Source: Lepidodermella squamata (Eukaryota > Animalia > Gastrotricha). From it: DNA of 64,000 nt. A program made the translations under genes and the position numbers. Under the pieces are notes generated by a model that worked only from the letters and a program-made list of their open reading frames with translations, had not been told where the DNA came from and did no database searches. Below are positions 20,098 through 55,446 of the stretch, piece by piece; position 1 is the stretch's first letter, and each line of letters opens with the position of its first letter. The stretch lies in the NCBI GenBank assembly GCA_047495785.1, contig JBLDXI010000032.1:2852001-2916000 (forward strand), written 5' to 3'.

Positions 20098-23000
20098 ATG
20101 ATATTGAAAAACAATGCAATTTACGGGCTGATAATTTTTTGCGGATTCATTCTAACAACTTTGGGCTGTAATACTCCATCTTATTGGTTTTGGGGCCCGA
20201 ATACAAAATGGCCGGCCGAGGGCGTTAAATATCGATTTGAAGGTATTTCATATTTTATCGTATCTGCTTTTGGCATCCAAGTATTTTTTAGCTAATATAA
20301 ATGAAACGGAGAAGCAGCTGATTCGCGACGGAATTTCCATGTGGACATCAGTGACTTGCATCCTATTCACCCAGAGAGACGACCTTCCTAGCAATGAAAA
20401 TGGCGTCATTTTCAATAAAACAGATGCCGGGTTAGTTTTTCAGCTTTTTTGAGAAAGGCGGAAGTGTGAATTTTGTATATTCCTTAAAATTATCGAAATG
20501 ACAATGAAAGGAAGAAACAGTACTCAGATTTTCAGGTTTTTTTGTGATTTTGAACATTTTGAACCTTTAAAATTGAGTTCCCCAAATAGTAAAACTCTAT
20601 TAATTCTCCTTTCACCAGAGAATGCATCTCGGACTATGGCATGTATGGTGCTACTCCTCAGCAAGTTTTGCTTACCCCGGCTTGCTTGAAAGTAACTTCA
20701 CCCAGCCCTTGGTTTTCACTTTCCCTAATCAATTTTTGCTACAGAGTCCTGGTGAAATCGCTCATGAAATCGGCCATATTCTTGGATATGTAAGCAATTT
20801 GTGAATGTCATAGGAATTGATTGCCAAAGCTAATGATACCTTAAATAGACTGATGAACATCGAATGCAAACTCGCGATAATGGTGTCAAAATTAATTTAA
20901 CAAATGTTAAGCCGTAAGTTTTTTTAAAACGAATTTCAGTGGCTTAAGGGAAAACCTGGATTTTCAAGAAAAAATATTCCAGAAATTCGAAAAAATTCCA
21001 AGTTTTTGAACCAAAATTCCTTTATAATTAACTTTAATTTAATTTTAAATATGTTTAAGATCCGACTATTATTTATTTGAAAAATCGCCGCAACTTGTCA
21101 ACAATGATCAGAAGTCTACCCTGTACGACTACTGGTCTATAATGCAACAAAAACCAACGTATAAAAGCATTGATGGGAAGTCGCTCACGATTGTTCCTAA
21201 CGACTTGTCCTACTTGTCTGTTATGGGCCAGCGAAACAGAATTTCCTACGACGAAGGTCTACTTATGTCGATATTGAGCGATTGCTCCGGTTAAACACCA
21301 ATTTTACAAATTCTGCGATACAATTAATTTTCCTTTTCAAGCATCCGGCACTAACTGCAACGGCCATGGCTATGCTAAGGGGTTGGATTGTGTGTGCGAA
21401 CCCGGATACGACACAACGACCAATTGTTTAACCCTGGTTTCCAACGACAACCAGATTTGCGGACCGGGTTCAAATGAAATTACCATGGCCGGATGCGAAA
21501 CCGGCTCCATCGATTTGCCGTCGGGGAACCCGCCAAAAGGGTCTTCATGTGCTTGGAAAATAACTACGGTGATATAATAATGATGAATTATCTTCGAATT
21601 ATCTTTAAAATTGAAATTTTTCTCTTCTTGAAGACCGGTTCTGGTCTTGCTTTTGGTTTCGAGTCAAAGCCATTGAGAAGCAGCCGAAACTGCTCGATAT
21701 CCGGTAAGTTGTTCAATGTTCACTGGGTGGTTATTTTTTAATTTAATTCCTAATTTTAGGGCTAATTTGCGACGATTACGTTCAAATTTATGATTCTAGC
21801 CACTTGAAAACTCTACGGTATCAGCTGAAATGTGTTTGCAGTTACTGAAGTTAATTTCTTTTTATTCAGCTTCTGCACGTGCGGTATCAGTTCTGGGCGA
21901 GTTTATACAACGACTTCAACCACAATATTTGTCAACTTTTACAAGAGCACAGACGAGAGTTTCTCTCCGTCTCGGCTTAGTTTTTACTCCTCCTGTAATG
22001 GGGTTCCGGCCAGCAGGCTGACTCGTGAATGCCGAATTACTGAGACTGGTTACGACTATGAAGGACGGCTAATTGGTTATGCTGCTAACGGGCGGAAATG
22101 TGGCAAATGGCCCTTCCCCAAACCAGGTAACACTGAGTTCGACTTTCCAAAGGCGATTGTGCCTGCATTCAGCGTTTGCCGAAATCCAACATCGCAACCT
22201 AAGGCGTATTGCTACGAACAACGTTCGAAAGCCGCATCTCCTTGTCATATCAGAAAATGCGGTGAGCTTTCATGTTAAAATCCGGAAAAATTTTTAATTT
22301 TTAATTTTTACAGAACCCTACGTTCGGTGTGTCACAAGCGATAAGAGAAAATTCGCGGGTTGCCGTCCATTGTCCACTGGTTGCCAAGTTGGCGATACGC
22401 GGGTAATTAAGCTCATTCTGGACAACTATAATATAATATAGAACCTTCCACCCATCAGCTTGTTCCATTCGATGCCAGTAAGTCTCCGTCCGAACTCGTC
22501 TACATCGATCACATGGCATGTAGATACGGAGTAGGTCATTTTTATGAACTTATTCAATTTAATTTCCTTAAATGCTGAATTATTTTCAGAGAGCAAGATG
22601 CTGCTTCTCACTGCAGGGTGGAACTTACCAAGTTAGCTCCGGAGCCGCGAAATGTGGAAGCAATCAATTCCAAGTATTATAATTCAATTATTTCTAGGAT
22701 GGCGACTAAACAATCGTTTTAGCTTGCCATTTTCGATAAACTCTACCCGGTGAAATTCCGTGAGAATTACGACGAAGCTGCTGAAAAATGCAACAGCAAC
22801 GTAAGTAGGACTGAATTGGGAGATATTTTTAATTTATTTTGTGAGCAGACAAGCGTGAAACGGTGTTCAGATAACAATGGCGCTATCGTCACTTGTGTTG
22901 GCGTCCAACAACAGTGTCCCAACGGGCTAACGGCTGGTTCGACATCTTATTCGTCTTTCGCAAACTGTAAACTTGGGGTAAGATCAAAAACTCGTTAGAT

Positions 23001-23556
23001 GCACTTCAATACTTCACCCTTTGTTGACGTTTGCCAGGACACTTTCAGATATTGTTCTAAAAAGGATTCCTCGATAGCCCGTTGCATTGACGCCCGACAG
23101 CAATGCGACTCTCAAACCGAGGATGATGTAAGAAATTTGGCCTGAAATGAGCCATTTTTCAATTATTTTTGTTTCCAGTCTTTTCCTGTTTTCGATCAAT
23201 CGACCGATTTCTCCGTCAATTTGGCGCAGTGCCTCGAAGCCGGCTATGCTGTATGTTACGACAAATCGGATGGAATGTCGAAGGGCTGTTACAAGGCGTC
23301 GACTTGTGTCGGCAATTTGCAGCTAGACGTCGCTCGGCTCTACGGCAGCCAAGACGCCTGTGAGAACCAGCTTCCAAACCTGCAATCTGCCTCCTTTGAT
23401 GATCCCATCTCGCAGCAGGTCGATAAACTGCTTGAGGAGCATAAAGACAAGCTGTTGGGGCTGAATGGTGCTCAGAAGGAATTTGCCAGGTACGTTGCTA
23501 CGCGCTACGTCAAGGCGCGGCAGCCTCAAGTCATCGAAACGACCCCTTATCCGTAG
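20098..23556 (+). CDS. Astacin-like metalloprotease with EGF, CUB, kringle and Cys-rich domains, copy A1 (~17 exons)
   Basis: Signal peptide, KWP..VKYRF, HEIGHILGY|TDEHRMQTRD, YDYWSIMQQ, MGQRNRIS, EGF (CVCEPGY), CUB (CAWKI, CDDYVQIYD), kringle (GYDYEG..NGRKCGKW..VCRNP..KAYCY), Cys-rich region and a helical tail. Confidence 0.85.
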
Positions 23557-23816
23557 AGCACTTGAACAATAATTATTTATCTGACGAGATGAAGATGATT
23601 TCGACTTGGAATCGCTCTTAAATATTGAATAAAATGCGACTGGTTGAATTGAATTTATCACGCTTAAAAATGGTCTACTTCATGGGCACTACACGAAGCA
23701 GCTACCGTATTACAGGAATAGAATCGCCGCCTTATCGTGCTGCGGATTGGGCTAACCCTATAGGGGTAGCGTCCAGCCAACTACATGATGCTATATGCTA
23801 TACTTTGGGTCAGTAA

Positions 23817-23898
23817 GGTAGCGTGGCCGAGTGGTCTAAGGCGCTAGATTTAGGCTCTAGTCTCTTCGGAGGCGTGGGTTCGAACCCCACCGCTGCCA
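23817..23898 (+). tRNA. tRNA-Leu (anticodon UAG)
   Basis: GGTAGCGTGGCCGAGTGGTCTAAGGCGCTAGATTTAGGCTCTAG..GTGGGTTCGAACCCCACCGCTGCCA: full cloverleaf with long variable arm and a downstream T-run. Confidence 0.96.
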
Positions 23899-23961
23899 AC
23901 AGTTTTCACATTTAAATAATCCAAAATTTCAAATCGAAATTGACAATCGAATTTTCAGACA

Positions 23962-24033
23962 AGCAGAGTGGCGCAGTGGAAGCGCGCTGGGCCCATAACC
24001 CAGAGGTCTGTAGATCGAAACTACGCTCTGCTA
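23962..24033 (+). tRNA. Initiator tRNA-Met (CAU)
   Basis: AGCAGAGTGGCGCAGTGGAAGCGCGCTGGGCCCATAACCCAGAGG..GATCGAAAC..CTCTGCTA: A1:U72 pair, three G:C anticodon-stem pairs, ATCGAAA T-loop, T7 terminator downstream. Confidence 0.95.
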
Positions 24034-27361: not shown

Positions 27362-30300
27362 ATGCATGCGCAAATAAGGGCGATGTATGGCCTGATTTTT
27401 ATCGGGCATCTCGTTCAAATCGCATTGAGTTGCTATCCCAGCTATGTCGGCCCGAATCTAGACTGGGTGGGTTACACCCTTAAATATCGATTTGAAGGTT
27501 AATCAATTTTCTCATACTTACCGATTGTTATAATAATATTATTTTCAATTTGATCTCGCCTTTTTCAAGCAAACATCAACGAAACTGAGAAGCAGTTGAT
27601 TAGAGATGGCATTTCAATGTGGGAATCAGCGACTTGCTTCCCTTTTAAACAGAAGGATGACTTGGCGGTCGACGATAAAGGAATTGTTTTCAGCAAAACT
27701 GATACTGGGTAAGGTTTCTTTCTACAAATCTCAAATATTTTTGGGTTTTTCATCAGTGCTCAACAATTTTTGCTGGTTTCATTATTTGATGATTAGAACC
27801 TAATTCATAAAATATTTCACTGCTCTGAAGGGTCTTTGGGTCAATAATATTGAAGTTCCCATCGCTATATTATATACTGTACTCTGAACTGTCCGAATTA
27901 AAAACTACCACATTTTTGAGCTGGTCCTTCATTTTTTCAAGCCAACTAAAAGTTTAATTCTTGGGACCGTCCATAGAGCTAGTTTTAAGATAGAGGTCCT
28001 ACTCCTGACAAAGCCTGTTAACGCCATGGGCGCCAGATGTTGTGATGAATCAGCATCGAGTGGTTGGAAAAGTAAACAAATCAGGTGATTTTCGATCGCT
28101 CATTATTCTTGAACGATTCATCACAATCAATCACTTCCGGCGGTTCGAGATAGCCCTTGAAAGGACGAACACATTTATTATTTTTGCGAAATTTTAATGA
28201 TTTTTAAAATGGGGTAAGTCGCATAAAAACGAAATTGATCGATTAATAAAACATGACAACTGCCATTTTGGCAGCGAAATTGAAACGTATTTTAAATGGA
28301 CCTGGTAAATCTTATCAAGCTCTACATTTTGATGCTTGGAGCGAGCTTGGACAAATTTTTTCTGATTTTCTGGAATTTTTTATCTATTGAATGAATGGTT
28401 TTCCACTACATTCGAACTCTGTTCCAGCTCTGGACTGAATTCAGCCACACCTTGTGCATGTGGCGCACGTGCTGTCAACAAAGATTGAATCCATTCTGGA
28501 TTGAATCCAACGGGCAGTCTCGATCTTTATAATGTAAAAAAGCAACCAGAATAATTTATAAAATTCTAGAAAATCAGAAAAAAATGTGTCCAAGCTCGCT
28601 CCAAGCATCAAAATGTAGAGCTTGATAAGAATTACCTGGTTCATTAAAAATACGCTTCAATTTCGATTTAATTATTAGTTAAAGTAAATTTATTTGAAAT
28701 CAAGAAATTGTTTTTCTTGATTTCACTGCTTTAGTTTGGTCAGAAAATTTCGAAAAATAATAGTGGTGTTCACCATTTAAAGCGCTATCAGGTACCACCA
28801 AACTTTTCCTCGGGGAAATTGCCATGAATGCGATATCCGGAATCGAAAAATCACCTGATTTGTTTACTTTTCCAACCACTCGATGCTGATTCGTCGCAAC
28901 ATCTGGCGCCCATGGCGTTTACAGGCTTTGTCAGGAGTAGGACCTCTATCTTAAAACTAGCTCTATGGGACCGTCCTTTACGGTGGCGCGTGCCCTCACA
29001 AAGCAACGCGTGCCTTATCTCTTACCTGACCTTTATCCTTTATTTGAGGCCTGACCTAATTAGTTCGAATGACCTTTGAACCCTGTCTTTTTTTAAAGCC
29101 GAAACTAAACGGGGCGGAATTTTCGGGCAGTACGGTAGGCCATTATTTCTGATTTTCGAACAAAATTGATTGGCTCAATTAAATAAATAAATCGTTTTCT
29201 AAAAATGCACTTTATAAAATTCAAGTCAAATAAATAAAAATCCTGTCTAAAAATGATCATTCTAAGTAACATTCTTGAGTTCCGAGAGGAATTGAAGTGC
29301 GCAGTGCCTTGACAAAATAAGGCACCCTAGTGCGGTTCGAAATTCTATTTTACCTGTACCTATCTGTTTTCTTAGCGAATGCGTCTCAGACTATGGCAGA
29401 GTTGGTAATTCGCCGCAGCAGGTCGTGTTATCGCCGGCTTGCTTAAATGTAAGTGGTTCTTCTCAAGCCTAACATGTTATCGCAATCTAATTCTTCTATC
29501 AGAGCGCTGGTGAAATCGCACATGAATTGGGCCACGTTCTCGGATACGTAAACTCTTTGAATAATTGAAGTTTCATATTAGTCAAAATGTGAACTTGAAG
29601 GCTGACGAGCATCTGAAGCACAGCCGTGATAGTGGTGTCAAAATTAATCTGAGCAACGTCACACCGTTAGTTACCTTAAATCAATCACCTTATATCAATT
29701 ATTTAATGCTTTAATTTTGAAATGTTTAAAACAGATCAGACTACCATTATTTTGATAAATATACGGCTGATGTCAACAATGATCAGAAATCAGTAGCATA
29801 CGACTACGAGTCTATCATGCAGAAGCGGCCGACCTACAAAAGCGTCGACGGGAAGGCTCTTACTATTGCTCCCTACGACTTGGTTCACCTCTCAGTTATG
29901 GGCCAGCGAAACAGAATATCATACGCCGAAGGATTGCTGATGTCTACAATGAACGGATGCTACTGTTAGTGGCCAATTGAAATAAGCTCAGGGCTCAATA
30001 TAAACTTGCGTTGCCTTGCAGGGTATGGCGCTGACTGTCATGACAACGGCTATGCTATAGATGGGACAGACTGTATATGCGAACCCGGCTACGACCCGGT
30101 ATCTGATTGCTCCGCCCTGCTGTCGAATGACATTGCGATTTGCGGAACAGTTCAAAATGAAATTCAAGTAGCCGGCTGTGAGACCGGCCACATCGATTTG
30201 CCATCGGGCAATCCGCTACGTGGATCAACGTGCACCTGGAAAATAACAACGGTATAGTACAACGTGTCCAATCAGTTTCACAAACAATTCATGGTTTTAT

Positions 30301-33300
30301 CTATTTTTATCTAAATTTATCTAAATTTATCTATTTTTCTATAATCAAACATACCTGGAGCTCTTTCCATTATCCGTGATTTAGCTGGTTCAGGGTTTTC
30401 TTTTGCTATTTTTACCCAATCGAAACACTATTTTCCTGGATTTGTTGTTATTTTCCTTGTCACGTATCGTACCTATAATTGCCTCACCCTTGGAATTTTT
30501 GTTGTCGAATAGACAAATTTCACAAGGTTCGGAAGCATTTGGAATGAGAAGGTACATCGCCTCTCGTTTTAAACCTTAAACTGTCTTATCCTGTGTATTT
30601 TTTCGGTTACTTTTCTTATAGGACTCACTGTAGAACTTGGGGAATTCAAGTTTGATTTCTGCCCGAAGCAAAAATAACAAATTAGGACGGAAAAATAAAT
30701 TCCGCATTTTAGGTTTTAATTGTCGTAAATTTTCATTTTTAACGCAAACAAAGACATTTTACGGAAATGGAATCAGAATGTCCCGTGAGAAAAATTCCAA
30801 ATGCCTTGAGAATAAAATTAGGCTAGATTGTGAATGGGAATAAAAGAAGCTGGAGAAACTTGGTCCGACCAGATGAACCCAACCTTCGGGTGTTCCCCGA
30901 ATTTCCTGCGGTACATTTTTAAGCGAAATCTTCCGGCAAGAGCAACTTTTGTAAAACAGATAAATTTCCTGTAAAAAGCCAAACAATGACTGTGGAAATT
31001 ATGGGAAACATTTTGGGACAAAAATAACTATACTTTTAATGTTTTACAGACTGGTTCCGGTCTTGCGTTCGGTTTCGAATCCAAACCATTGAAAAGCAGC
31101 CGAGACTGCTCCCTATCAGGTAACTGGTCTCAAATATTGAGCAACCAACGGAAGTTCTGATTTTAGGACCAATTTGCGACGATTTCGTTCAAATTTACGA
31201 CCCCATTAACTTGAATACCCGACGGTAATTGTTAGAAATTGTAGGCTATTTTCACTAAAGATTATTTTTTTCACGCAGATTCTGCTCGTGTAGTATCACC
31301 TCGGGGCGAATATATTCGACGACTTCAAAAACAGTCATGGTCACTTTTAGTAAGCTCACAGACGAAAGCTTCTTGCCGTCGCGACTCAGTTTCTACGCCT
31401 CCTGCAACCGCGTCCCTGTTACACGGCTGACCCGAGAATGTCGTATCACTCAGACTGGCTATGACTACGAAGGACGGCTGATTGGTCATGCCGCGAATGG
31501 TCGGAAATGCGGAAATTGGCCCTTACCCCAGTCTGGTTACACCGAGCTCGACTTCCCCCATGCAATCGTTCCAAAGTTGGCAGTGTGCCGGAATCCAACA
31601 TCGAAGCCCGCCGCCTTTTGCTATGAAGAATTAACTAACAAGCCATCGCCTTGTAACATCAGGAAATGCGGTGAGAAATTGAGTAAAATGTCCCATCAGG
31701 ATTCCAAGCTTCGATTGAGTCGTTACAGAACCCTACGTTCGATGTGTTACCGGCGATAAGAAGAAATTTTCGGGTTGCCGGCCGTTGTCCAGTGGTTGCC
31801 AAAGTGGGGAAATACGGGTTAGTTTCTTCTTGACCAGTAGGACTGGATTGAAAAATTTGGATACCACCTTCAGCTCGTCCCATTCGATGCGACCAAGGTT
31901 CCATCTGAGCTGGTTTATATTGACCATATGGCATGCAGATACGGAGTAAAAGTCATCATTTTCATTAGTTCCCGTCTGAATGTTTTTCAACTCCCATAGA
32001 GAGCAAGATGCTGCTTTTCACTGCTGGATAAAACCTATCACGTTAGCTCTGGATCTGCGAAATGTGCCAGCAATCAATACAAAGTATGATTGGAGTCTCA
32101 ACAATTTTTGTTTCGGAATCCGTTAATTCTTCGTTATTCATTTTTCAGCTTGCCATTTTCGATCAACTCTACCCTGTCAAGTTCCGCGTGAACTACGACG
32201 AGGCTGCCGCGCAGTGCAATGGCAACGTAAGACTATTTTGTATTTATATCAGAGCTTAACATAATGTGAGATTTCGGACACCTAAGGCTTTGCGGTTATC
32301 GGGGTTGAAAGTTAGAAAAATATGGCAATTTTCGAATAATCTCATCAGAATTTTTTGCATGTAAATCAAGGTACTTAATTGGAAAAAAATTATATCTTGT
32401 AATTGTTGAACTGGTTCGGACCTCGAAATTGTTCATTTTTGAGTCGGAAAAGCTGTTCTCAATTTGTTCCGAAATTCGACGTTGAGTTTTAAGGATGGGT
32501 CATGAAATTCAATCATCAGGCAAAAATCAGGCAAAATGAAAAAGTCACCTCTGCTTCGATTTTCAGAACTTATTGAGTAAAGGCTCATTTTCAACCTTCG
32601 GATCTTGTCCAAATTGAGCTTTTATTTTATTCATCAGACAAATGTCAAACGCTGTTCCGATAGCAGTGGAATTACCGTCACTTGCGTGGATGCAGGGAAA
32701 CAGTGTCCCAAAGGCCTAGCGATTGGAACTACCACGTACTCTTCCTTCGCTAACTGCAAACTCGGGGTAATTTTCTAATTCAGAGGCAAATCACTCATGT
32801 GTGTCATTTGTTATCAGGACACTTTTAGGTATTGCTCTAAAAAGGATTCCTTGAGGAAAGCCCGTTGCGTTGACGCCCGACATCAATGCGACTCTCAAAC
32901 TGAGGATGATGTAAGATTTTTGGCCTAAAACGAGCCATTTTTCAATAATTATTTATTCAATGATTTTTGTTTCCAGTCTTTTCCTGTTTTCGATCAATCC
33001 ACCGATTTCTCCGTCAATCTGGCGCAGTGCCTCGAAGCCGGCTATGCTGTATGTTACGACAAATCGGATGGAATGTCGAAGGGCTGCTACAAGGCGTCGA
33101 CTTGTGTCGGCAATTTGCAGCTAGACGTCGCTCGGCTCTACGGCAGCCACGACGCCTGTGAGAACCAGCTTCCAAACCTGCAATCTGCCTCATTTGATGA
33201 TCCCATCTCGCAGCAGGTCGATAAACTGCTTGAGGAGCATAAAGACAAGCTGTTGGGACTGAATGATGCTCAGAAGGAATTTGCCAGGTACGTAGCCACG

Positions 33301-33354
33301 CGCTACGTCAAGGCACGACAGCCTCAAGTCATCGAAACCGCACCCTATCCGTAG
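27362..33354 (+). CDS. Astacin-like EGF-CUB-kringle protein, copy A2
   Basis: MHAQIRAMYGLIFIGHLVQIALSC signal; HELGHVLGY|ADEHLKHSRD (29521); YDYESIMQK. Same exon structure as A1, with introns enlarged by insertions. Confidence 0.82.
27972..28967. mobile_element. Foldback DNA element with 8-bp TSD (P-element/hAT-like termini) in intron 2 of A2
   Basis: GGACCGTC|CATAGAGCTAG ... CTAGCTCTATG|GGACCGTC. About 125-bp TIRs plus a second inner inverted pair (~28275-28380 / 28560-28665). Confidence 0.85.
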
Positions 33355-34649
33355 AGAACTTCCGCAATTATTATTTATCTGGCGAGATGCAGATGATTTC
33401 GACTGAAAATCGTTTTTAAATATTGAATAAAAGCGGAAATATGAACTGAAGAATTTATTATACCTGGTATTGTAGCTATCATGTCTCGGAAATACGGACA
33501 TTTCTTAATTGGTAAAACATGTTCGGAACGGAAATAATAATAATAGTAATATTAATTAAAATGGCTGTAATCTCCTCATCATAGGTATCACTTTTGCATC
33601 AGCTAACTTTTGCTGTCCAAATTCCAGCCAGCTAGGATTCCCCTCTTTATGTTCTCTTTCCGGCCATTAGGCTGTTGCAACTATTGAACTATTCTCACGG
33701 TTCACGGGGACTTGCCGTGATTTCCCAACAATTTACTAAAAATAGGTAAACGGATATGCTCTCAGCCTGGCGATGTTAGAGCCGATGGAAAACACAGTTT
33801 TATGGCTGGTGGGAGCGCCGAAAATAGACTAAGACTTACTGGATGCCAATCGTTCTTTCCCATGCATTAAACTATTTTTGAAGATATGAAAATGGGAATG
33901 TCAACGCTTGGACAAGCTTGGACTTTCGGGTTTTTTCGGCCGATTGGCTCGCTTAGCCGAGCCTCGACGATTGTTTGGTGACGAAGTTTATAGCCTTTGC
34001 CAACCTTTGGCCGAAAAAGCTCCGCTCTAAGTCCGCGGTTCTAGGCATGGCATGAATTCCTGCTAACACCTAATAAATGCTAGAGTAAAGAAGCATTTTC
34101 ATAACGCCTAATAAAATGCCTGGTTTAACGGTTGATAACCGTCGAAGGGGCTGAATTTCAGAGATTATTTGGGCATTTTTCAAGCATTTCCAGGAATGAC
34201 TGAAGCTTGGAAATTGCTGACACAAAACTTCAAGGCGTTTGCCAGCCGTTAGATTGAAACCTTATGTCCGCTGGCATTTGCAGGCGTTAGAATCGATCCA
34301 CCTTAACGCTTTAGTTTGCTTATTAGACGAGTGAAACTTGTGATACGACTAGATATTTTCAAGACAATTTATTTATTGTCTAACTATTCTAGTAAATTTA
34401 GTATTTAGACAATGATTATTGTCCAAATATTCTGGTAAATCGAACGTTTCACCAGTTTCTGGCGGCCTTGAGCTTCCGCCCTCCAAGCAATTTTTATTGC
34501 TTTTTCTGGCGGACTGGTTTATTTTCAGTTAGATTCAATGAAAAACCAATTATTTTTCTAATTATGGCAAGAATAACTGTAGAGAAATTTTGCCTACCAC
34601 AATTTTTCAAAAACATCTTTCACTACCCAGCCTATAAAAAGCCAGTAAA

Positions 34650-36041
34650 GAGGAAAAATTCGCGGGCCGTCGACCACCGTCTAATGGCTGCCAAGTTGGA
34701 GAAACTTGAGTTTGTTGCTACAAAATTTATATGCGCTCTAAAAATAAGGATAAAACATGTACCCTTTCAAGCTTGCTCCATTCGATGCCAATAAGTCTCC
34801 CTCCGAACTAATCTACATCGATCACATGCCATGCAGATACGGAGTAAGTCGTTTATTTATTTTCATTTCTGTTGCTAAACTGTTCAACAATTTTCAGAGA
34901 GCTAGATGCTGCTTTTCACTGCAGAGTGGGACTTACAAACCAAGTTGGCTCCGGGGCAGCGATATGTCGAAGCAACCAATACCAAGTAACAACAATTGAA
35001 ACACAATATTTAGGTCTCGAGACTGAACTAATATATTTATAGCTTGTCATTTTCGACAAACTCTACCCGATCAAGTTCGCGAGAACTACAACGAAGCTGC
35101 TGAAAAATGCAAAAGCAACGTAAGTCTAATTATTGATGAAATTTAGCGTTAACAGTTTATTTCCGACGTTTCGATTTCTAACAGCAATCATCTTCAGGGA
35201 GATGAAGTTGAATAGTTTAGGCGTAAAAATTTCATCAATCGTTTGTACTCCAAAAACTGGTTATCAAGTAAGTCTAATTTCATATATTTTTTTGAGCAGA
35301 CCGCCGTGAAACACTGTTCCGATAACAATGGCGTTATCGTCACCTGTGTTGGCGCCGAGCAGCAGTGTCCCAACGGGTTATTACGGCTGGTTCGACCTCT
35401 TATTCTTCATTCACAAAGTGTAAACTCGGGGTATGATTGAAAGCTCTTCAGAGAAAATTCAGTTTATTAACCTTTTGCTGATGTTTTTTTCCAAGACACT
35501 TTCAGGTATTGCTCTAAAAAGGATTTCAAGAAAGCCCGTTGCATTGACGCCCGACAACAATGCGACTCTCAAACCGAGGATGATGTAAGAATTTCGGCCT
35601 GAAATGAGCCATTTTTCAATGATTTTTTATTCCAGTCTTTTGCTGTTTTCGCTCAATCGGCCTATTTCTCCGTCAATTTGGCGTAGTGCCTCGACGCCGG
35701 CTTGGCCATGTGCTACGACAAAACAGATGAAATGTCGAAGGGCTGCTACAAGGCGTCGACTTGTGTCGGCAATTTGCAACTAGATGTTGCTCGGCTGTTT
35801 TCAACTAAAAATGTGGTAATCTTGTGATAATCACGCCATGAACAACTTGCAATCTGCTTTATCGCCCGGTCTCATCTCGCACAAGGTCGATGAGCTGTTG
35901 AACATGCACGAGGACAAAATGGTAAGAAAATGGTTGGGATGACTGAAGCCCAATTGGCAATTGGAGATGGCTAGGTACATCGCCACGCGTTACGTAGCGT
36001 CTCAACTGCCGGAAGAACACCAAGAAGCCCCTTATCCTTAG
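34650..36041 (+). pseudogene. 3'-half pseudogene of the astacin-kringle family
   Basis: Homologous exons after the kringle. Frameshifts near 35080 and 35380, CAG>TAG at 35684, Penelope-like insert in an intron. Ends EEHQEAPYP* like A3. Confidence 0.85.
35132..35267 (-). mobile_element. Short Penelope-like insertion with partial inversion and 12-bp TSD
   Basis: Matches 26336-26430, including the hammerhead (35162-35200, one stem II mismatch). Flanked by gtaagtctaatt at 35120-35131 and 35268-35279. Confidence 0.75.
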
Positions 36042-42760: not shown

Positions 42761-43617
42761 ATGGGAAAACGAAACCTCGATTCTAACTTTAATTCCTCTC
42801 CGACCTGTGACCTGTTATAAGATTTTTGAAACCAAACTTGACTTTTCTCGCACTGCTGTCAAAGACTCAGTCTGTTAGGCCTAGAAAAACAAGTAGAATT
42901 ATCAGTTTGAAAAGCTAAAATAACTTTAGGCAAATTTACTTATGTGGGCTGCTTGCATTATTTAAAAAGGCGAAATTAGGTTCGTCATGGAAGAAGCTAT
43001 TATCTTATGAACCCTAACAATCTGGTCGTCCTAATGCCGCCACGTGACAGCAGCTGAAAGACGCGCAAGTTTTTTTTCGCGAATCCGAAAATAAAAATTA
43101 TGACCGTATTTCAGAGAGACGCGCGTGTGTGTACACGATAACTCAGCTGCCAGCTTTTCTATCGTGACCGATATTTCGCGGACCCACGAATTTTGTAGTC
43201 TAACATTTCAACCCTTTAGCTACCAGACGTGGTAGAGGTGTTTAACTAGCTGCTTTAACCAACTGTTTATCCTGGGTGTATTTCATCTGCTCTCAGAAAA
43301 AGGATTATTAATTATTTTCGAGTGACAAGCGATTTTAAAAATGTTTGTATTTACCCAGAAATATAAACAGATGCTATCTTTTTTATTTACCGCGGGGCCG
43401 TAACCCCGGTTTTAGGAGGCGCGTCTGATGGTGGGCACTTCCTCCTAGACAGTTGCTTCCCGTTGCTGGTTTTTCACCACAGCTCTCCCGTGTGCTACCG
43501 TTAGCCATTATTAATTCAAAGGGGCCCTCGGGGAGGGATCGTATTCGGGGTGTGCAACCTTTCCGGGTACTGGTCGTTAAAAAAACGAAATATACGGTTA
43601 TTTATTTTGCGAGCAGA

Positions 43618-44254
43618 CCGTCGTGAAACGCTGTTCCCATAACAACGGCGTGTGTTGGCGTCCAACAACAGTGTCCAAAAGGCCTTATACAGCTGGTTCT
43701 GCCTCTTAATCTACCTTCGGAAACTGTAAACTCGGGGTAAGATTATAGGCTCATTTGAGACAATTCAATTGTTCACCTCTTGCTGTTATTTCCAGGACAC
43801 TTTTAGATATTGCTGTCAAAAGGATTCCTAGAAAACCCGTTTTGTTGACGCCCGACAGCGATGCGACTCTCAAATTGAGAATGATGCACTTATTCTCCGT
43901 CAATTTGGCGCAGTGCCTCGACCTTGGGGCCTCGACGCCGGCTATGCTGTATGTTACGACAAATCGGATGGAATGTCAAAGGGCTGCTACAAGGCGTCGA
44001 CTTGTGTCGGCAATTTGCAGCTAGATGTCACTCGGCTCTACGGCAGCCAAGACGCGTGCGAGAACCGGCTGTTGAACTTGCAATCTGCCTCGTCTGAGGA
44101 TCCTATCACGCAGCAGGTCGATAAACTGCTCGAGGAGCATAATGACAAGCTGACCGGGCTGAATGGTGCTCAGATGGAATTTGTCAGGTACGTTGCCACG
44201 CGCTACGTCAAGGCACGGCAGCCTCAAGTCATCGAAACCGCACCCTATCCGTAG
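43618..44254 (+). pseudogene. 3'-terminal fragment of the astacin-kringle family
   Basis: Last three exons with deletions, stops and a small duplication (gcctcgac). Ends ARQPQVIETAPYP* like A1/A2. Confidence 0.85.
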
Positions 44255-46588: not shown

Positions 46589-49500
46589 ATGAGTTCACTA
46601 TTCGGGATGGTTGTTCTGGTTATCACACCCCATATCATATCGGGCTGCTACCCCTCTCATGCCGGCCCGAATCGCCTATGGTTTGTTCCAAATCCCAACA
46701 ATCCAGATGGATTTGCAATTTTTGACAAAATTAAATTCGGGTTCGCCGAAAGTAATATTGTTCGATCTAATGTAACTTAATCAATAATAATTTACATATT
46801 CTTTGAAGATATTGCCGCTGCGGAGAAGCAGTTGATCAAAGACGGCATGTCCATCTGGTCTTCAGCGTTCTGCGTCGAGTTTGACGAGAAGGAAGTTGTA
46901 CCCAGTGACTCCAACGGGGTTATTTTCAACAAAACGAATAGCGGGTTAGTTCCAGTTTTTTGATCATTCCATGGATGATTCATTGGCTAATTAAGCGAAT
47001 GTATCACGGATTACGGCATGGTTGGTACAACGCCGCAGCAAGTCTTGCTATCTCCTGCTTGCTTGAGTGTAAATTGAATAAAATATTATAAATATCTTAA
47101 TTAATTATGTCCTTCTATTTAGAGCGCTGGTGACGTCGCCCATGAATTGGGACACCTTCTTGGTTACGTAGGTTTTTATATCAAAAATTATTCAAGATCG
47201 GCTAATGTTTTCTGTTTGAAGGCCGATGAACATCGAAAGCTTAATCGCGATGACGGTGTAAAAATCGATTTGAGCAAAGCCCAATCGTATGACGATCCTT
47301 AATTTGTTGTCATAATTAGTGAACATTCTGTTTTACAGGTCATCCTATAACTTATTTGAAAAGTCTGCGGTTATGTTGAACAACGATCAAAAAGCGATTT
47401 CATACGACTACGCGTCGATAATGCAGCAAATGGCGACTTACAAAAGTGTTGATGGCAAGTCCCTGACGATCATACCACTCGATTTGATTCACCTGACTGA
47501 AATGGGTCAGCGAAGAAGCGTTACTTTCGATGAAGGATTGCTGTTTACTGGGATGTACTGGTGTGGTGGTAATTTTTTACTAGTTTCAATCCTTACGTTT
47601 CGATACGTCGCTTTTCAGCAAAGCAAATAAACCAGTCTTTGGGTTGTCACGACAAGGGCTATGTATCCATAACGAAGTGCGTCTGCGAACCTGGTTATGA
47701 CGCGCAGGCGAATTGCGCCAGCCTTATTCCGAATGCTCCCGACATTTGCGGGCCGAGTCAACAGGAAATCCGTGTCGCCGGCTGCTCAACCGGCTACATC
47801 GATTTGCCGTCAGGGAACCCGCCGAAAGGTTCAACGTGTGCTTGGAAAATAACAACCGTAAGATTCGAATAAAAAGAGCTACAACTTGCATTATTATTTT
47901 TTTTACTTTGAAGACTGGCTCGGGGCTTGCGTTTGGGTTCGAAGCTAAACCACTGAAAAGTAGCAGAAATTGTTCAAATACCGGTGAGTCGGTTCTTCGA
48001 CAAGTTAATATTGCCAGATGAGTAGTATTTTTTATTTATAGGCGCATTGTGCGATGATTATGTCGAAATTTACGATTCGAAAAAAGTTCAATATCGCCGG
48101 TAAATTTATCTTTCAGTAACGGCGGGCAATTTTGGACAAGATATTCTTCATATATGGTCAAAATTAGTCAAAATTATTTGAGCCATTGTCGTTTTTTATA
48201 TACTCGAAGTTGTCCAAAGTTGTGCGCCGTTCTGCGGAATTACATGAATTTTTCGCCCTAAAATTATTTGCATTTTTTCTCTCAGTTTTTGCACGTGTGG
48301 TATCAGTGCTGGCAGAATTTACACGACGACCTCGGACACCGTGATTGTAACTTTCCACAAGAACACGGACGAAAGTTTCTCGCCGTCTCGACTGAGTTTC
48401 TACGCCTCCTGCAATGGCGTTCCGGCCACTCGGTTAACTCGCGAATGCCGCGTCACCGAGAGTGGTTACGACTACGAAGGGCGGCTAATTGGGCATGCTG
48501 CGAATGGGCGCAAATGCAGGCGCTGGAATTCAGCGCAGATGACATCGTCCTGGTACGATTTCCCGCGTGGTGTGGTGCCGAATTACGGCGTTTGCCGGAA
48601 TCCGACGTCGGAGCCCAAGGCGTACTGCTACGGCGATGGTGGAAACACGCCACAATTTTGTAAAATCAAGAAGTGCGGTAAGGAAAAAATGCTGAAATCC
48701 ATTCAATAATCTATAACCAACTTACCAAAATCAATTAAAAATAATAACCGACTTAATATTATACAGTCTGTACCATAAATGTTGGTTAAAGTTTTCTCCT
48801 TGCCATTTCACCAATCGTGGAATTTTTCCTCGAACCGTCGATCGCTGGAAAAAGGACTCTCGCTTGATTTTTTTTAGTCATAGATCATCTTTGTGCCATG
48901 AGCGGAAGGGAAGTATACCATATCAGCAAATATCTCATTTTTTAAGATCGCGAATGGCAAACTTTCAGAACTCATATTTGACCGTTAACAAAAGTCGCGC
49001 AATAAAATTTGATAGCCTTGCACAGTCGAGATATTTTTGGGGTAATCTGAGGTGAGGAATCTTGCTAGATATTCAAAAATTTTGATGGAATCAAGCTAGT
49101 GCTTCCCCGTCAACTTGAATCGATAGGCCTTGCGGCGACACTTTGGTGGTCTCCCGTCTTTTGAGGTGGATGGTAGCCTCCTTGGGTTCTGCATTTTGAA
49201 AATTCAAAATCCTCAAGATAAACTGAGTAGGGACATCTAGGAATCCATGAATCATCCCTCTTAAAACTTTCATTTGCTGGAAAATACAGAAAATACGTCA
49301 AACCCGACTTTTCACTTGTCAGTGGCGGTTCTATCTCTCCAATCGCGAACCGTTCCGAATGTTAATTTATTTTAGAAATCTTTCATAAAAAGGCTATTAA
49401 TTTTCGGTTGCCAAATTTTCAAACCTTGTTCATTTAGAACCCTACGTGCGGTGCGTCACAAGTGATGGGAAGAAATTTGCCGGCTGTCGACCATTGTCAA

Positions 49501-50697
49501 GCGGCTGCGGGGCTATGGAATCACGAGTTTGTTTTTTGGGGGAATTATGAGCAAATAGCGATGAAACTGATTTGAAATGCCCGCCTTTTAGCTTGTTCCT
49601 TTCGATTCGACTAAGTCTCCGTCCGAACTCATCTACATTGATCACATGGCATGCAGATATGGAGTAGGTCATATTTTCAATTAATTTCCGTTTCGATTAT
49701 GCCGTAATCATTTTCAGAGAGCTAGATGCTGCTTTTCGCTGGCGGATAAAACGTATCATGTTAGCTCTGGAGCTGCGAAATGTGGAAGCAATCAATACAA
49801 AGTAACACTAATTTATAGGTCAGGTATTTATGACCTGACTCGGCTGTTTTTTAGCTTGCTATTTTCGATAAACTCTACCCGGTGAAATTCCGTGAGAATT
49901 ACGACGAAGCTGTTGAAAAATGCAGCGAAAACGTATGCCTAGCAGCTTTAAGAAAGGTCATCCATTTTTAAATAATTTTGTGAGCAGACAAGCGTGAAAC
50001 GCTGTTCCGATAACAATGGCGCTATCGTCACGTGTGTTGGCGTCCAACAACAGTGTCCCAATGGGCTCACGCCTTTCGGCACTTATTCGTCCTTCGCAAA
50101 CTGTAAACTCGGGGTATGATAAAAAGCTCCTTCGAAGCTATTCAATTGCTCACCCTTTGCTGTTGTTTTCACAGGACACTTTCAGGTATTGCTCTAAAAA
50201 GAATTCCTCGAAAGCCCGTTGCGTTGACGCCCGACAGCAATGCGACTCTCAAACTGAGGATGATGTAAGATTTTTTGCCTGAAATCAGCCATTTTTTCAA
50301 TGACTTTTTATTCCAGTCGTATTCTGTTTTCGATCAATCGACCGATTTCTCCGTCAATCTGGCGCAGTGCCTCGACGCCGGTTTCGCAATGTGCTACGAC
50401 AAATCGGATGGAATGTCGAAGGGCTGTTACAAGGCGTCGACTTGTGTTGGCAATTTGCAGCTCGATGTCACTCGGCTGTTTTCAACCAAAGACGCCTGTG
50501 AATACCACGTCACTAACAACTTGCAATCTGCCTTTTCGCCCGATCTCATCTCGCAAAAGGTCGACGAGCTGTTGAAGCTGCACGAGGACAAGCTGGCTGG
50601 GAGGAGCGAGGCCGATTTGCAGTTGGCTAGGTACATAGCCACGCGTTACGTAACGGCTCAACAGCCTGAAGAACACCAAGAAGTTCCTTATCCATGA
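46589..50697 (+). CDS. Astacin-like EGF-CUB-kringle protein, copy A3
   Basis: MSSLFGMVVLVITPHIISGC signal; HELGHLLGY|ADEHRKLNRD (47141); YDYASIMQQ. Same exon structure as A1. Confidence 0.83.
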
Positions 50698-52193: not shown

Positions 52194-55100
52194 ATGTTGG
52201 CTACCTTTTATTTTCCACTGCTCGTCCTAGCGACGATTTTTTCCCAATCGTTGGGGTATCCAGCTGCTTACAAGATTTTCGCCCCATACGTTGGGCCCAA
52301 TGATGCGTGGCCGACGGGCATCAGCATCAAATACCATCTTTCAGACAGTGAGTCCAGATTATTTTCAAAAATCTTTCTTCAATTTTTACCATAATTAATT
52401 AAGGCCTGACAAATGGCGAAAAGACAGTGATTAGGCAAGCTATATCCTGGTGGACCTCTCGGACATGTTTGGTATTTTTGGAAAAAGCGAGTCTGAACCT
52501 AAACCAGCCTGGAATTATTTTCACGAAAAAATCCTCAGGGTAGTAGCAAATTTTCTGATTAGAAGCCGCCTTAATTAACTTTATTTTCTGTTCCAGGGAA
52601 TGTGTTACAGATATCGGGCGAGTTGGAAATACTCCTCAGACAGTCGAATTATCGCCGGCCTGTATCAGGGTCTGTTAATTGCCTCCATTCAATTTATTTA
52701 TTTATTTTTATATCAATTTTTAGAGTGTTGGAACGATTGCGCATGAGATCGGTCACATTTTAGGATATGTGAGCCAATTTTTCGCAAACATTTCGTTCAA
52801 TAAATAATACCATTTCTTATAGATCGACGAGCATCAACGATACCGTCGTGATCAAGCGATTTCAATCGATTTAAAATCTGTCAGAGCGTAAGAAATTTAA
52901 AGCCGGCTATATACCGCCTAATCACCCAACCGTGAAATCAATAGGTCACTATGGGATAATTTTGACAAATTGACACCGTCGAACAACGCCTTCAAGTATT
53001 GGTACGATTTCGCGTCGATAATGCAGCAGCCTACTACTTACCTTACGTCCTTCACCGGAGCTAGAACTATCATTCCGAAAGATCCTTTGAATGTTAACAT
53101 TATGGGGCAAAGGAACGACCTTTCCTACCTTGACGGGTTGAGAATGGCTGCGATTTATGGCTGCTTTGGTACGTAGCGTAATTTCGCAATTTCAGGTATA
53201 TCAGTTTTATCTTTTAGCTAAGGTTACGAATAGCTGCCACAAACGGGGTTACCAAACTCCGAATGGTTGCATTTGCAAAGCGGGCTATGATAGCCAGACG
53301 TCTTGCAACACCCTGATACCCCTCAATCCGGCGGTATGTGGCAATGGCCCACAGGAAATTGTCGTGCCAGGGTGCGCAACTGGTTTCATTGATCTACCCT
53401 CTGGAAATCCGCCTATTGGGTCTACATGCGTTTGGAAAATCAAATCGGTTACTACATCAAATTCTATTGTTAAAAAATTAAAATTAATTTTTTTCAGAGT
53501 GATGATGGAGCAAGCTTTGCTTTTGGCTTTGACTCTCGGCCCTTGAAGAGTGATCGAGACTGCGCAAAAATGGGTAAAAAAAATTTGGAAAATTTTGAAA
53601 AACCTCCGAAAAATTCGTTTTTTTGTCAGGTCCCATTTGCGAAGATTACGTTGAAATTTATGACCCAGTGACCGAGAAATCAAGCCGGTAAAAAATTTGT
53701 AATTTATTTGTACATTTTTAAGGTTGATTTTTTCAGATTTTGCACCTGCGGTATAAGCGCCGGCAGGGTGTTCAAATCTGCGTCCTCTGAAGTCATAGTC
53801 ATTTTCCGAAAATTCACCAACGAAAATTTTGAAACTTCACGCCTCGGTTTCTACGCGACGTGCAGTTGGCAACCGGCTACGGCATTGACCAGGGAGTGCC
53901 AGATTACCGAAACCGGGTATGATTACGAAGGCTCAGTGGCGAGATCGGCCTCGGGACATAAGTGCCTGCCGTGGCCTGTTCTTAGCTATGTCAGCGACTA
54001 CGACTTCCCGAAAGGCATTGTCTTGGCTAACAGCGGTGTTTGCCGCAATCCAACTTCAGCCGAACAGGCGTTTTGTTTCATTCATGCGAGGAACCCAGTT
54101 CAATCACCCTGTAGCTTGAAAAAATGCGGTTAGAAATTCAGCCTCAAATTTCTGCTTAATATTTTTCGATTTTGTTTATCCCGCAGAGCCATATGTTAGG
54201 TGTATAAAGGGCCTGAGACACAGGGAATTCTCTGCCTGCCGCCCGCTAGAACTCGGCTGTTTACGCTATGAGAATCAAGTTAGCTTCAATTTATTTTTCA
54301 AAAAAATATCAATAGTTATCTCAATTTTTTCCAAAGCTTGAACCGTTCGATGACGAGGGCAGTCCATCGGAACTCGTGTATATCGATCACATGGCATGCA
54401 GATTCGGGGTTTGAGAAATTTTATAAAATTTAGGTTGAAATACGATTTTTTCAATAGAGAGCCAAGTGCTGCTTCTCCTGGGCATCGAAATTATACCACC
54501 ACGGCTCTGCAGAAGCTCCGTGTGCCAGCAATCAATTTCAAGTAAAATATTTAAAAATTGCCTGATATTTGTCAATTTTTTTCTCAGCTTGAAATCTACA
54601 ACAAACCATATCCAGCTATTTTTGGCGACAATTTTCACAGCGCTGTCTCAACATGCACGGATAAAGTTATTTGCAAATTTTTTCGAACTATCAATATTCG
54701 AGAATTTGTTTTAAGGTGGCTGTTAAACGATGCGCTGACAGGCACGATAAAACGGTTGTCTGCGTTTCGGTTAAGAAACACTGCCCGGATCATTTGAAAG
54801 AAGGAAAGGTCTATCTATCGTACGCTAACTGCTATCTGGGGGTCAGTTTTCAAGAAATGTATTCGCGTTAAAAACTAATTTTTTTTACAGGATGCCTTCA
54901 GATTCTGTGTTGCTAAGGACAAATCAGCCCGCTGTATTGACGCCCGGCAGCATTGTGATAAGAAAAATGAAGTCGAGGTTTTAATTTCAAATTCCAAATT
55001 ATTTCGTTTTATTCCTCGGTTTTTATACGCAGACCGGCCATTTCGGGGAATCAGCCGAGTTTGCGAAGAATTTAGGCAGATGTCTCAACAACGGATTCGC

Positions 55101-55446
55101 AATTTGCATAGATAGAAACAACGGCAATGCAAGAAGCTGTTGCAAAGTGTCATCGCCCGGATCGTTGCAGCTCGTTTTGAACAAACTTTTCGCCACAAAA
55201 GCGGCGTGTGAAGCGAGAAAAATGCTGCTCCAATCGTCGGCATCACGCCGCTCCGACCTGCTGGATACTATCGAGATGAAGGCTGCGGATGTTGTGGCTG
55301 AAAATCGCGAAGAGTTCGATAAATTGAACGATGTTCAAAAAGCCTACGCTGAACAATTCGCTAAATTGTTTGTTCTTTCTCGCCTTGACGATGAGAAAAC
55401 CGAAAATCCTATCCCTAAACTTGACAAGGAGGATGAGAATTTATGA
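52194..55446 (+). CDS. Astacin-like EGF-CUB-kringle protein, copy A4 (most divergent)
   Basis: MLATFYFPLLVLATIFSQSLG signal; HEIGHILGY|IDEHQRYRRD (52742); YDFASIMQQ; kringle GYDYEGSVARSASGHKCLPW..VCRNP. Conserved intron positions. Confidence 0.83.

What the first reader, a model, noticed from the sequence alone, without database searches (positions are those of the whole stretch)
20755..21160. Astacin subfamily with a rewired zinc site: HExxHxxGYxDEH and no Met-turn tyrosine
Seen after splicing in all four intact copies: HEIGHILGYTDEH, HELGHVLGYADEH, HELGHLLGYADEH and HEIGHILGYIDEH, with Met-turns SIMQQ, SIMQK, SIMQQ and SIMQQ. Known: astacins use HExxHxxGxxHE and SxMHY, with Tyr as a switch ligand; Asp as third ligand is known in a few other metzincins such as snapalysin but is atypical for astacins. 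The catalytic Glu and family-specific Glu are kept, and the change is fixed across diverged paralogs, which argues against decay. Inference: altered metal coordination or specificity, or a non-proteolytic binding role. The motif is split by an intron and so is invisible in the ORF track.
Basis: partly seen in the sequence, partly recalled or inferred. Interest (0 to 1): 0.82.

Follow-up and report, generated by a model that had tools for sequence, protein, structure and literature searches.

The report
Astacin-like genes with Asp zinc ligand
Four neighbouring, intact animal genes encode secreted astacin-type zinc proteases in which the third zinc-binding histidine is always aspartate and the usual zinc-binding tyrosine is missing; I found no description of this variant in astacins, and nobody has tested whether the proteins still cut.

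Summary
The window holds four intact + strand paralogs. Each has 17 exons, all 64 introns are GT-AG, and the products are 786-801 aa. All four read HExxHxxGYxDEH across a conserved phase-0 intron of 53-59 nt, and their Met-turns read SIMQQ, SIMQK, SIMQQ and SIMQQ.

Pfam calls the protease exons Astacin. In an alignment with 55 related astacin domains, the Asp falls in the column of the third zinc His (53 H, 2 P). The Gln/Lys falls in the column of the switch Tyr (51 Y).

The copies are old: synonymous sites are saturated and dN/dS is 0.07-0.18. The zinc segment is the best-conserved part of the protease domain. No alternative acceptor restores GxxH.

No protein in a 1.84-billion-protein library belongs to this clade, and none of the 125 nearest hits has Asp at this position. 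The papers I could search describe no such astacin.

The proteins also lack a prosegment. They carry an EGF-like region, a CUB-like region, a kringle and an unassigned Cys-rich tail.

My best reading (about 0.5) is a working but altered or dampened His-His-Asp metalloprotease, analogous to ADAMDEC1. The main rival (about 0.3) is a non-cutting binding module.

No RNA data exist, and no 3D model could be made. Other first-reader notes of this scan report the same variant on other DNA of this genome; I could not check them.

The parts
20098..23556 (+). Copy c1: complete 17-exon gene, 787 aa. It encodes a signal peptide, an astacin-like domain, an EGF-like region, a CUB-like region, a kringle and a Cys-rich tail.
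   Evidence: Gene model (all introns GT-AG, one stop at the end). Pfam Astacin on exon 6 and Kringle on exon 10.
20763..20860 (+). c1 zinc motif HEIGHILGY|TDEH, split by intron 20790-20848. The Asp codon GAT is at 20852-20854.
   Evidence: Alignment to the third-His column.
21136..21150 (+). c1 Met-turn SIMQQ. The Met is kept; the zinc-binding Tyr is replaced by Gln.
27362..33354 (+). Copy c2: complete 17-exon gene, 786 aa. Intron 2 (1667 nt) holds a foldback element at 27971-28968.
29521..29612 (+). c2 zinc motif HELGHVLGY|ADEH, split by intron 29548-29600. The Asp codon GAC is at 29604-29606.
29811..29825 (+). c2 Met-turn SIMQK.
46589..50697 (+). Copy c3: complete 17-exon gene, 796 aa.
   Evidence: The kringle scores 34.4 bits, above the cut-off.
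47141..47233 (+). c3 zinc motif HELGHLLGY|ADEH, split by intron 47168-47221. The Asp codon GAT is at 47225-47227.
47415..47429 (+). c3 Met-turn SIMQQ.
52194..55446 (+). Copy c4: complete 17-exon gene, 801 aa, the most diverged copy (43-46% identical to the others in the catalytic domain).
   Evidence: The kringle scores 41.9 bits.
52742..52834 (+). c4 zinc motif HEIGHILGY|IDEH, split by intron 52769-52822. The Asp codon GAC is at 52826-52828.
53015..53029 (+). c4 Met-turn SIMQQ.
34644..36038 (+). Decayed fragment of the same gene family. It holds only the C-terminal Cys-rich module and carries stops and frameshifts.
   Evidence: tblastn; frame translations.
43617..44251 (+). Second decayed fragment of the C-terminal module.

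Best explanation
These are four functional paralogs of a lineage-specific clade of secreted, multidomain astacin homologs. Their catalytic zinc is held by His, His and Asp (HExxHxxGxxD) instead of His, His, His plus Tyr. I think they most likely still bind zinc and still hydrolyse peptide bonds through the retained general-base Glu. Their activity is probably dampened or narrowed, and their sensitivity to inhibitors probably altered. That is what a review reports for the His-to-Asp swap in the ADAM-family protease ADAMDEC1. They have no prosegment, so they would be made without the usual zymogen latency, which fits an enzyme of low intrinsic or highly restricted activity. The C-terminal modules (EGF-like, CUB-like, kringle, Cys-rich tail) would supply target binding. 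Shown here: the gene models, the homology, the residue equivalences and the purifying selection. Inferred: zinc binding by the Asp, retained catalysis, dampened activity and secretion.
For: There are four intact 17-exon ORFs with canonical splice sites. Pfam Astacin passes its cut-off on exon 6 of every copy. A profile of the four catalytic domains matches canonical astacins at about 100 bits over positions 14-209. In the alignment, Asp sits in the third-His column (others: 53 H, 2 P). The catalytic Glu, both His, the Gly, the family Glu, the Met and the four disulfide Cys are all kept. dN/dS is 0.07-0.18 while dS is saturated. The zinc segment is the most conserved stretch of the protease domain, at 0.82 mean pairwise identity against about 0.5 elsewhere. 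Astacin homologs among the hits that are clearly dead have lost HExxH: P0064/P0126, P0114 and P0016. The pseudopeptidase review says such proteins usually lose both the ligands and the general base (PMC11266112). A review paper states that ADAMDEC1 carries HEXXHXXGXXD, is active in vitro and escapes TIMP1-3 (PMC5174729; PMC4885070). HEXXHXXGXXD is an accepted zinc-binding motif (PMC3890501).
Against: There is no transcript, protein, metal or activity data. Two catalytically relevant changes occur together, the third ligand and the switch Tyr, and the RxDRD motif is reduced to RD. The lack of a prosegment is unusual: the 2023 astacin review required a prosegment with a zinc-blocking Asp for every astacin it accepted (PMC9848320). 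That absence is also what a non-enzyme would show. No 3D model could be made to check that the Asp carboxylate reaches the metal.
Confidence: 0.5

Rival explanations
1. The proteins are pseudoproteases. The astacin fold is kept as a metal-stabilised binding or decoy module that no longer cuts, and function lies in binding by the cleft together with the CUB-like, kringle and Cys-rich modules.
For: The third ligand and the switch Tyr are lost together, RxDRD has eroded, and there is no prosegment or latency device. Astacin-like proteins with dead sites joined to kringles exist elsewhere, such as Branchiostoma P0064/P0126. Other unchecked scan notes report many dead astacins in this genome.
Against: The general-base Glu, both His, the Gly and the Met are invariant across copies with saturated dS, and this segment is the best conserved of the domain. 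Known dead metzincins normally lose these residues. A His-to-Asp swap alone does not kill ADAMDEC1, according to a review.
Confidence: 0.3
2. The site has been retuned for another metal or another chemistry, for example a harder metal ion favoured by a carboxylate ligand or a shifted pH optimum, rather than simply dampened.
For: A carboxylate replaces an imidazole and the fifth ligand is lost, which changes the charge and geometry of the site (sequence). The change is fixed in all copies.
Against: Nothing in the sequence singles out another metal. The known HExxHxxGxxD enzymes are described as zinc enzymes (PMC3890501).
Confidence: 0.12
3. The variant is a gene-model artefact, and real transcripts use another exon or acceptor that restores GxxH.
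For: No cDNA evidence is available. Another unchecked scan note reports an 8-nt micro-exon carrying the third His in a different astacin of this genome.
Against: The introns after GY are only 53-59 nt, GT-AG and phase 0 in all four copies. The canonical spacing HExxHxxGxxDE...RD is reproduced without a gap. No usable AG followed by x-His exists.
Confidence: 0.03
4. The copies are decaying pseudogenes.
For: The genes sit in a tandem, lineage-specific family with broken fragments nearby.
Against: There are four complete ORFs of about 790 aa with 64 intact splice sites and dN/dS of 0.07-0.18. The real fragments nearby are full of stops.
Confidence: 0.02

Closest known systems
Canonical astacins (MEROPS M12A, Pfam PF01400; crayfish astacin, meprins, BMP1/tolloid, nematode NAS and hatching enzymes)
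   Same: The catalytic domain is homologous over its whole length, at 30-34% identity to the nearest members. It shares HExxHxxG, the general-base Glu, the family-specific Glu after the third ligand, the Met-turn Met, the four disulfide Cys, a signal peptide and EGF/CUB-type tails.
   Different: The third ligand is Asp instead of His. The switch Tyr is Gln or Lys. RxDRD is reduced to RD. There is no prosegment with an Asp switch. A kringle and an unassigned Cys-rich tail are present. The four copies form their own clade (support 0.999) on a long stem of 1.02 substitutions per site.
ADAMDEC1 (decysin-1), ADAM family, M12B
   Same: It is a metzincin from a three-His family in which the third His is replaced by Asp, giving HEXXHXXGXXD. 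It is secreted. A review paper reports that it is active in vitro and escapes TIMP1-3.
   Different: It belongs to a different subfamily (adamalysin fold, not astacin), and ADAMs never use a Tyr ligand. It is a single mammalian gene, not an expanded array. The resemblance is in how the site may work, not in family membership.
Snapalysin (M7) and other HEXXHXXGXXD zincins
   Same: They use the same extended zinc motif with Asp as the third ligand. Snapalysin also keeps a conserved Met after the third ligand (PMC3890501).
   Different: They are small bacterial enzymes with no detectable sequence relation to these genes beyond the motif. Pfam assigns the window's proteins to Astacin.
Astacin-like proteins with a degenerate site plus kringles (Branchiostoma floridae C3ZEF2 / XP_035693549, here P0064/P0126) and the Helobdella fragment P0114
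   Same: They have an astacin-like domain followed by an EGF-like region and kringle(s). Their Met-turns also lack Tyr (SIMQW, SITQQ).
   Different: Their HExxH is destroyed and the third-ligand position is Pro, so they are clearly dead. They do not group with the window's clade in the tree.

Membership tests
Astacin family (M12A / PF01400) | Sequence homology of the catalytic domain to the family profile | tested here: met
   PF01400 scores 26-36 bits (cut-off 22.5) on exon 6 of all four copies, and 19.8 bits on exon 2 of c1. A profile of the four domains hits canonical astacins at about 100 bits. The Atlas look-alikes of exon 6 are Astacin clusters.
Astacin family (M12A / PF01400) | Zinc motif HExxHxxGxxH with three His ligands | tested here: not met
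   The first two His, the Glu and the Gly are present. The third ligand is Asp in all four copies, against 53 H and 2 P in 55 aligned relatives.
Astacin family (M12A / PF01400) | Family-specific Glu directly after the third ligand | tested here: met
   Glu is present in all four copies.
Astacin family (M12A / PF01400) | Met-turn SxMHY with a zinc-binding switch Tyr | tested here: not met
   Ser, Ile and Met are kept. The Tyr column reads Q, K, Q, Q, against 51 Y in 55 relatives.
Astacin family (M12A / PF01400) | ExxRxDRD motif after the zinc motif | tested here: not met
   Only the final Arg-Asp is conserved: DEHRMQTRD, DEHLKHSRD, DEHRKLNRD and DEHQRYRRD.
Astacin family (M12A / PF01400) | Two conserved disulfides (four Cys) of the catalytic domain | tested here: met
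   All four Cys columns are present in all copies and in 50-53 of 55 relatives. The pairing itself is inferred.
Astacin family (M12A / PF01400) | N-terminal prosegment with a zinc-blocking Asp (aspartate switch) | tested here: not met
   A hydrophobic signal-like N-terminus is followed, within about 12-18 residues of the predicted cut, by the conserved Trp of the mature domain. There is no room for a prosegment and no FxGD-like motif. The signal-peptide cut was judged by eye, not by a predictor.
Astacin family (M12A / PF01400) | Zinc-dependent endopeptidase activity | not testable with these tools
   This needs recombinant protein.
HEXXHXXGXXD metzincins (ADAMDEC1-type or snapalysin-type site) | Extended motif with Asp as the third ligand plus a Met-turn Met | tested here: met
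   The motif and the Met are present in all four copies. That the Asp actually binds zinc is inferred.
HEXXHXXGXXD metzincins (ADAMDEC1-type or snapalysin-type site) | Homology to ADAM (M12B) or snapalysin (M7) catalytic domains | tested here: not met
   Astacin is the only protease family Pfam reports for the pieces. The likeness is convergent and limited to the site.
Kringle-containing proteins (PF00051) | A kringle domain after the CUB-like region | tested here: met
   Scores are 41.9 bits (c4) and 34.4 bits (c3), above the 34.3 cut-off, and 31.6 bits (c1) and 28.2 bits (c2), just below it.
CUB domain (PF00431) | Profile match for the region between the EGF-like part and the kringle | tested here: inconclusive
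   Pfam reports no CUB hit on the exon pieces, and phmmer finds nothing among the fetched proteins. The domain is split over four exons and could not be submitted whole. The call rests on Cys spacing and the CxWxI / DYVxIYD-like motifs only.

The most novel reading that the evidence does not exclude
An expanded, prosegment-less clade of astacins has independently evolved the His-His-Asp zinc site seen in ADAMDEC1 and snapalysin and dropped the tyrosine switch. The result would be constitutively exposed, low-turnover or highly selective proteases that endogenous or prey/host astacin inhibitors cannot block. That would be a second, independent case of a metzincin escaping control by a ligand swap.
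Probability: 0.3. Interest if true: 0.65.

Novelty: new variant of a known kind. Interest (0 to 1): 0.5.

Why it matters
Astacins are defined in every review by three His ligands plus a switch Tyr. The 2023 family survey accepted only sequences with intact motifs and a prosegment (PMC9848320), so variants like this one were filtered out by design. Here the variant is old, intact, multi-copy and under purifying selection. That gives a natural experiment on two points: how much of the astacin zinc sphere is dispensable, and whether the ADAMDEC1-type His-to-Asp swap (dampened activity, escape from inhibitors) is a recurrent evolutionary route. It is also a warning for automated annotation. Motif-based filters would label these genes either ordinary astacins or dead ones, and neither label is justified yet.

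Tried and rejected
- **RNA evidence:** two searches for sequencing runs found only one DNA run of the organism and one unrelated run. Laying the reads showed genomic unitigs of two haplotypes and no splice joints.
- **Relatives in public proteins:** a profile of exon 6 against 1.84 billion representatives gave 125 hits. The best real hits score only about 55 bits, none belongs to this clade and none carries HExxHxxGxxD. The two top rows are repeat proteins and I take them as spurious. This covers only astacins near enough for a 76-residue profile, so it does not exclude independent Asp variants in distant astacin clades.
- **Metagenome loci scan with the same profile:** nothing found.
- **PDB sequence search with exon 6 alone:** no significant hit.
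- **Organism identification:** a conserved TRPM exon gave a single 36% hit without a name. Rfam gave only tRNAs and U1. The organism stays unknown, beyond being an animal with about 50-nt introns.
- **CUB domain:** not confirmed by Pfam on the pieces or by phmmer.
- **C-terminal 125 aa:** no Pfam or Atlas match.
- **Structure prediction of the catalytic domain:** left out.
- **Micro-exon or alternative acceptor restoring His:** rejected.
- **His after Asp-Glu as a new ligand:** rejected as a special feature, because H at that position is as common as Q in ordinary astacins (25 H and 27 Q of 55).
- **Papers:** full-text searches on astacin with third ligand, third histidine, kringle, pseudoprotease and HEXXHXXGXXD found no astacin with Asp as the third ligand. 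The two primary ADAMDEC1 papers are not held in the library.

Full report
**What is there**

The window is animal nuclear DNA with short GT-AG introns. A six-frame scan finds HExxHxxG at exactly four sites, all on the + strand. I built full gene models around each site:
- c1: 20098-23556
- c2: 27362-33354
- c3: 46589-50697
- c4: 52194-55446

Each model has 17 exons at homologous positions. All 64 introns are GT-AG and mostly 46-72 nt long. Each gives one uninterrupted reading frame of 786-801 aa.

In every copy the zinc motif is split after Gly-Tyr by a phase-0 intron of 53-59 nt. The joined motifs are HEIGHILGY|TDEH, HELGHVLGY|ADEH, HELGHLLGY|ADEH and HEIGHILGY|IDEH. The Met-turns in exon 6 read SIMQQ, SIMQK, SIMQQ and SIMQQ.

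**Are the junctions right?**

No RNA run of this organism was found. The one run that holds the locus is genomic. It shows two haplotypes, covers the introns, and lists no difference at the motif positions. The junctions therefore rest on four lines of indirect evidence:
- The splice signals are canonical.
- The same intron position and phase occur in four copies whose intron sequences are unrelated.
- The joined product reproduces the canonical astacin spacing without a gap, in an alignment with 55 relatives.
- There is no alternative. The introns are too short for a micro-exon. The only AG followed by an x-His codon pair lies 23 nt into the c2 intron and would give a non-motif.

I checked the micro-exon possibility because another note of this scan reports one carrying the third His in a different astacin of this genome.

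**What it is**

Pfam assigns exon 6 of all four copies to Astacin PF01400 above the curated cut-off, and exon 2 of c1 falls just below it. A profile built from the four spliced catalytic domains matches canonical astacins at about 100 bits over nearly its whole length. The nearest domains are 30-34% identical.

The alignment columns read as follows:

| Column | The four copies | 55 relatives |
|---|---|---|
| First His | H in all | 55 H |
| General-base Glu | E in all | 51 E |
| Second His | H in all | 54 H |
| Gly | G in all | 55 G |
| Third ligand | D in all | 53 H, 2 P |
| Family-specific Glu | E in all | 44 E |
| Met-turn Met | M in all | 52 M |
| Switch Tyr | Q, K, Q, Q | 51 Y |
| Four disulfide Cys | C in all | 50-53 C |

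The His after Asp-Glu is not special, because ordinary astacins have H or Q there about equally. The RxDRD motif is reduced to Arg-Asp.

Downstream come a four-Cys EGF-like stretch (weak Pfam hit only) and a CUB-like region. The CUB call rests on Cys spacing and motifs, because Pfam on the exon pieces does not confirm it. After these comes a kringle, above the cut-off in c3 and c4 and just below it in c1 and c2. Last is a Cys-rich tail of about 300 aa with no match in Pfam or, for its last exon, in the Atlas.

**No prosegment**

Each protein starts with a hydrophobic signal-like segment. The conserved Trp of the mature astacin N-terminal segment follows only about 12-18 residues after the predicted cut, so there is no room for a prosegment and no aspartate-switch motif. 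The 2023 review required such a prosegment for every astacin it accepted (PMC9848320). Copies c1-c3 carry one extra cysteine as the first residue after the predicted cut, giving 43 Cys against 42 in c4. I could not determine its role.

**Selection**

The copies are old. Synonymous sites are saturated (pS 0.65-0.89), while dN is 0.20-0.58. Where dN/dS can be computed it is 0.07-0.18, in both the protease part and the rest of the protein.

Within the catalytic domain, the zinc segment AHExGHxLGYxDEH is the most conserved stretch, at 0.82 mean pairwise identity against about 0.5 elsewhere. The Asp is encoded by GAT, GAC, GAT and GAC.

Two truncated copies of the C-terminal module, at 34644-36038 and 43617-44251, are riddled with stops. 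Unused copies in this region do decay, so the four intact genes are maintained by selection. The four form one clade (support 0.999) on a long stem of 1.02 substitutions per site.

**Relatives elsewhere**

A profile of exon 6 was read against all 1.84 billion representatives and returned 125 proteins. The best real hits score only about 55 bits. None belongs to this clade and none has HExxHxxGxxD.

A few hits are clearly dead astacin homologs. They include an amphioxus protein with an astacin-like domain, an EGF-like part and two kringles (P0064/P0126), a leech fragment (P0114) and a nematode protein (P0016). All of them have lost HExxH itself, and where the third-ligand position can be read (P0064/P0126 and P0114) it is Pro.

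A scan of metagenome contigs found nothing. This search does not exclude independent Asp variants in distant astacin clades.

Full-text searches found no description of an astacin with Asp as the third ligand.

Other first-reader notes of this scan report the same variant on other DNA of the same genome (s1-393978 and s1-430966) and dead astacins with a similar tail (s1-404918). I could not read that DNA, so these notes are leads only.

**How it most likely works**

HEXXHXXGXXD is an accepted zinc-binding motif (PMC3890501). Within the metzincins there is a direct precedent. ADAMDEC1 is described as the only mammalian ADAM protease with Asp in place of the third His, and a review paper reports that it is active in vitro and escapes TIMP1-3 (PMC5174729; PMC4885070).

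The switch Tyr is described as a fifth ligand that stabilises the reaction intermediate (PMC9848320). From my own memory of Yiallouros et al. 2000, which I did not check here, removing its hydroxyl lowers astacin activity but does not abolish it. It is general knowledge that MMPs and ADAMs work without such a Tyr.

Pseudopeptidases of the metzincin clan typically lose both the ligands and the general base while keeping the Met-turn (PMC11266112). The dead astacin homologs found here behave that way. These four genes do the opposite: they keep the general base, two His, the Gly, the Asp and the Met as the most constrained part of the domain.

I therefore favour (about 0.5) a zinc peptidase with a His-His-Asp site. 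It would be catalytically competent but dampened or narrowed, made without latency, and targeted by its CUB-like, kringle and Cys-rich modules.

The main rival (about 0.3) is a non-cutting binding module. Three things support it: two site residues are lost together, RxDRD has eroded, and there is no prosegment. A retuned metal preference is possible (about 0.12). A gene-model artefact or decay is unlikely (0.05 or less together).

**Verdict**

The proteins are homologs of astacins, but they fail four motif-level criteria of the family:
- the third His
- the switch Tyr
- RxDRD
- the prosegment

I class them as a new variant of a known kind. The functional claim is untested, and neither a transcript nor a 3D model could be obtained with the tools available.

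Noticed in passing
window 23817-24309: tRNA-Leu(TAG) at 23817-23898, tRNA-Met(CAT) at 23962-24033 and a U1 snRNA gene at 24150-24309 (103 bits) lie in a row on the + strand just 3' of copy c1. This mixes Pol III and snRNA genes, like a cluster another scan note reports elsewhere in this genome.
   Followed up: partly
window 27971-28968: Intron 2 of c2 holds a foldback element of about 1 kb. Its outer arms are 122 nt and 98% complementary, and its inner arms are 87 nt and 93% complementary. This makes the intron 1667 nt long, against 51-188 nt in the other copies.
   Followed up: partly
window 34644-36038 and 43617-44251: Two decayed fragments hold only the C-terminal Cys-rich module of the same gene family and contain stops and frameshifts.
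   Followed up: partly
window 23035-23638 versus 32815-33435: The last two exons, the intron between them and the 3' flank of c1 and c2 are 90.7% identical, against 71-73% for the exons upstream. This points to recent gene conversion between the 3' ends.
   Followed up: partly
window 20167-20169 (c1 Cys24); c2 Cys24 and c3 Cys20 are homologous: c1-c3 have an extra, odd-numbered cysteine as the first residue after the predicted signal-peptide cut (43 Cys against 42 in c4). It could be a free thiol, a dimer link or a zinc-blocking residue. This is untested.
   Followed up: no
window 22314-23556 (c1 exons 11-17) and homologous exons of c2-c4: The Cys-rich region of about 300 aa after the kringle has no Pfam match, and its last exon has no Atlas match. 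Another scan note calls a similar tail in a neighbouring family a C-type lectin; I did not confirm that here.
   Followed up: partly
window 56443-60418 (+) and 63164-63607 (-): There are exons of a TRPM-type channel (SLOG domain 142 bits, TRPM2-like domain 72 bits) and a run of LDL-receptor class A repeats on the opposite strand. The best public relative of the SLOG exon is only 36% identical, so this animal lineage is poorly sampled.
   Followed up: partly
window 20113-20303: The DNA run X1 carries two unitigs of similar depth (about 45-49) over this stretch. They differ at 11 of 191 positions, which points to very high heterozygosity or two collapsed near-identical copies.
   Followed up: no
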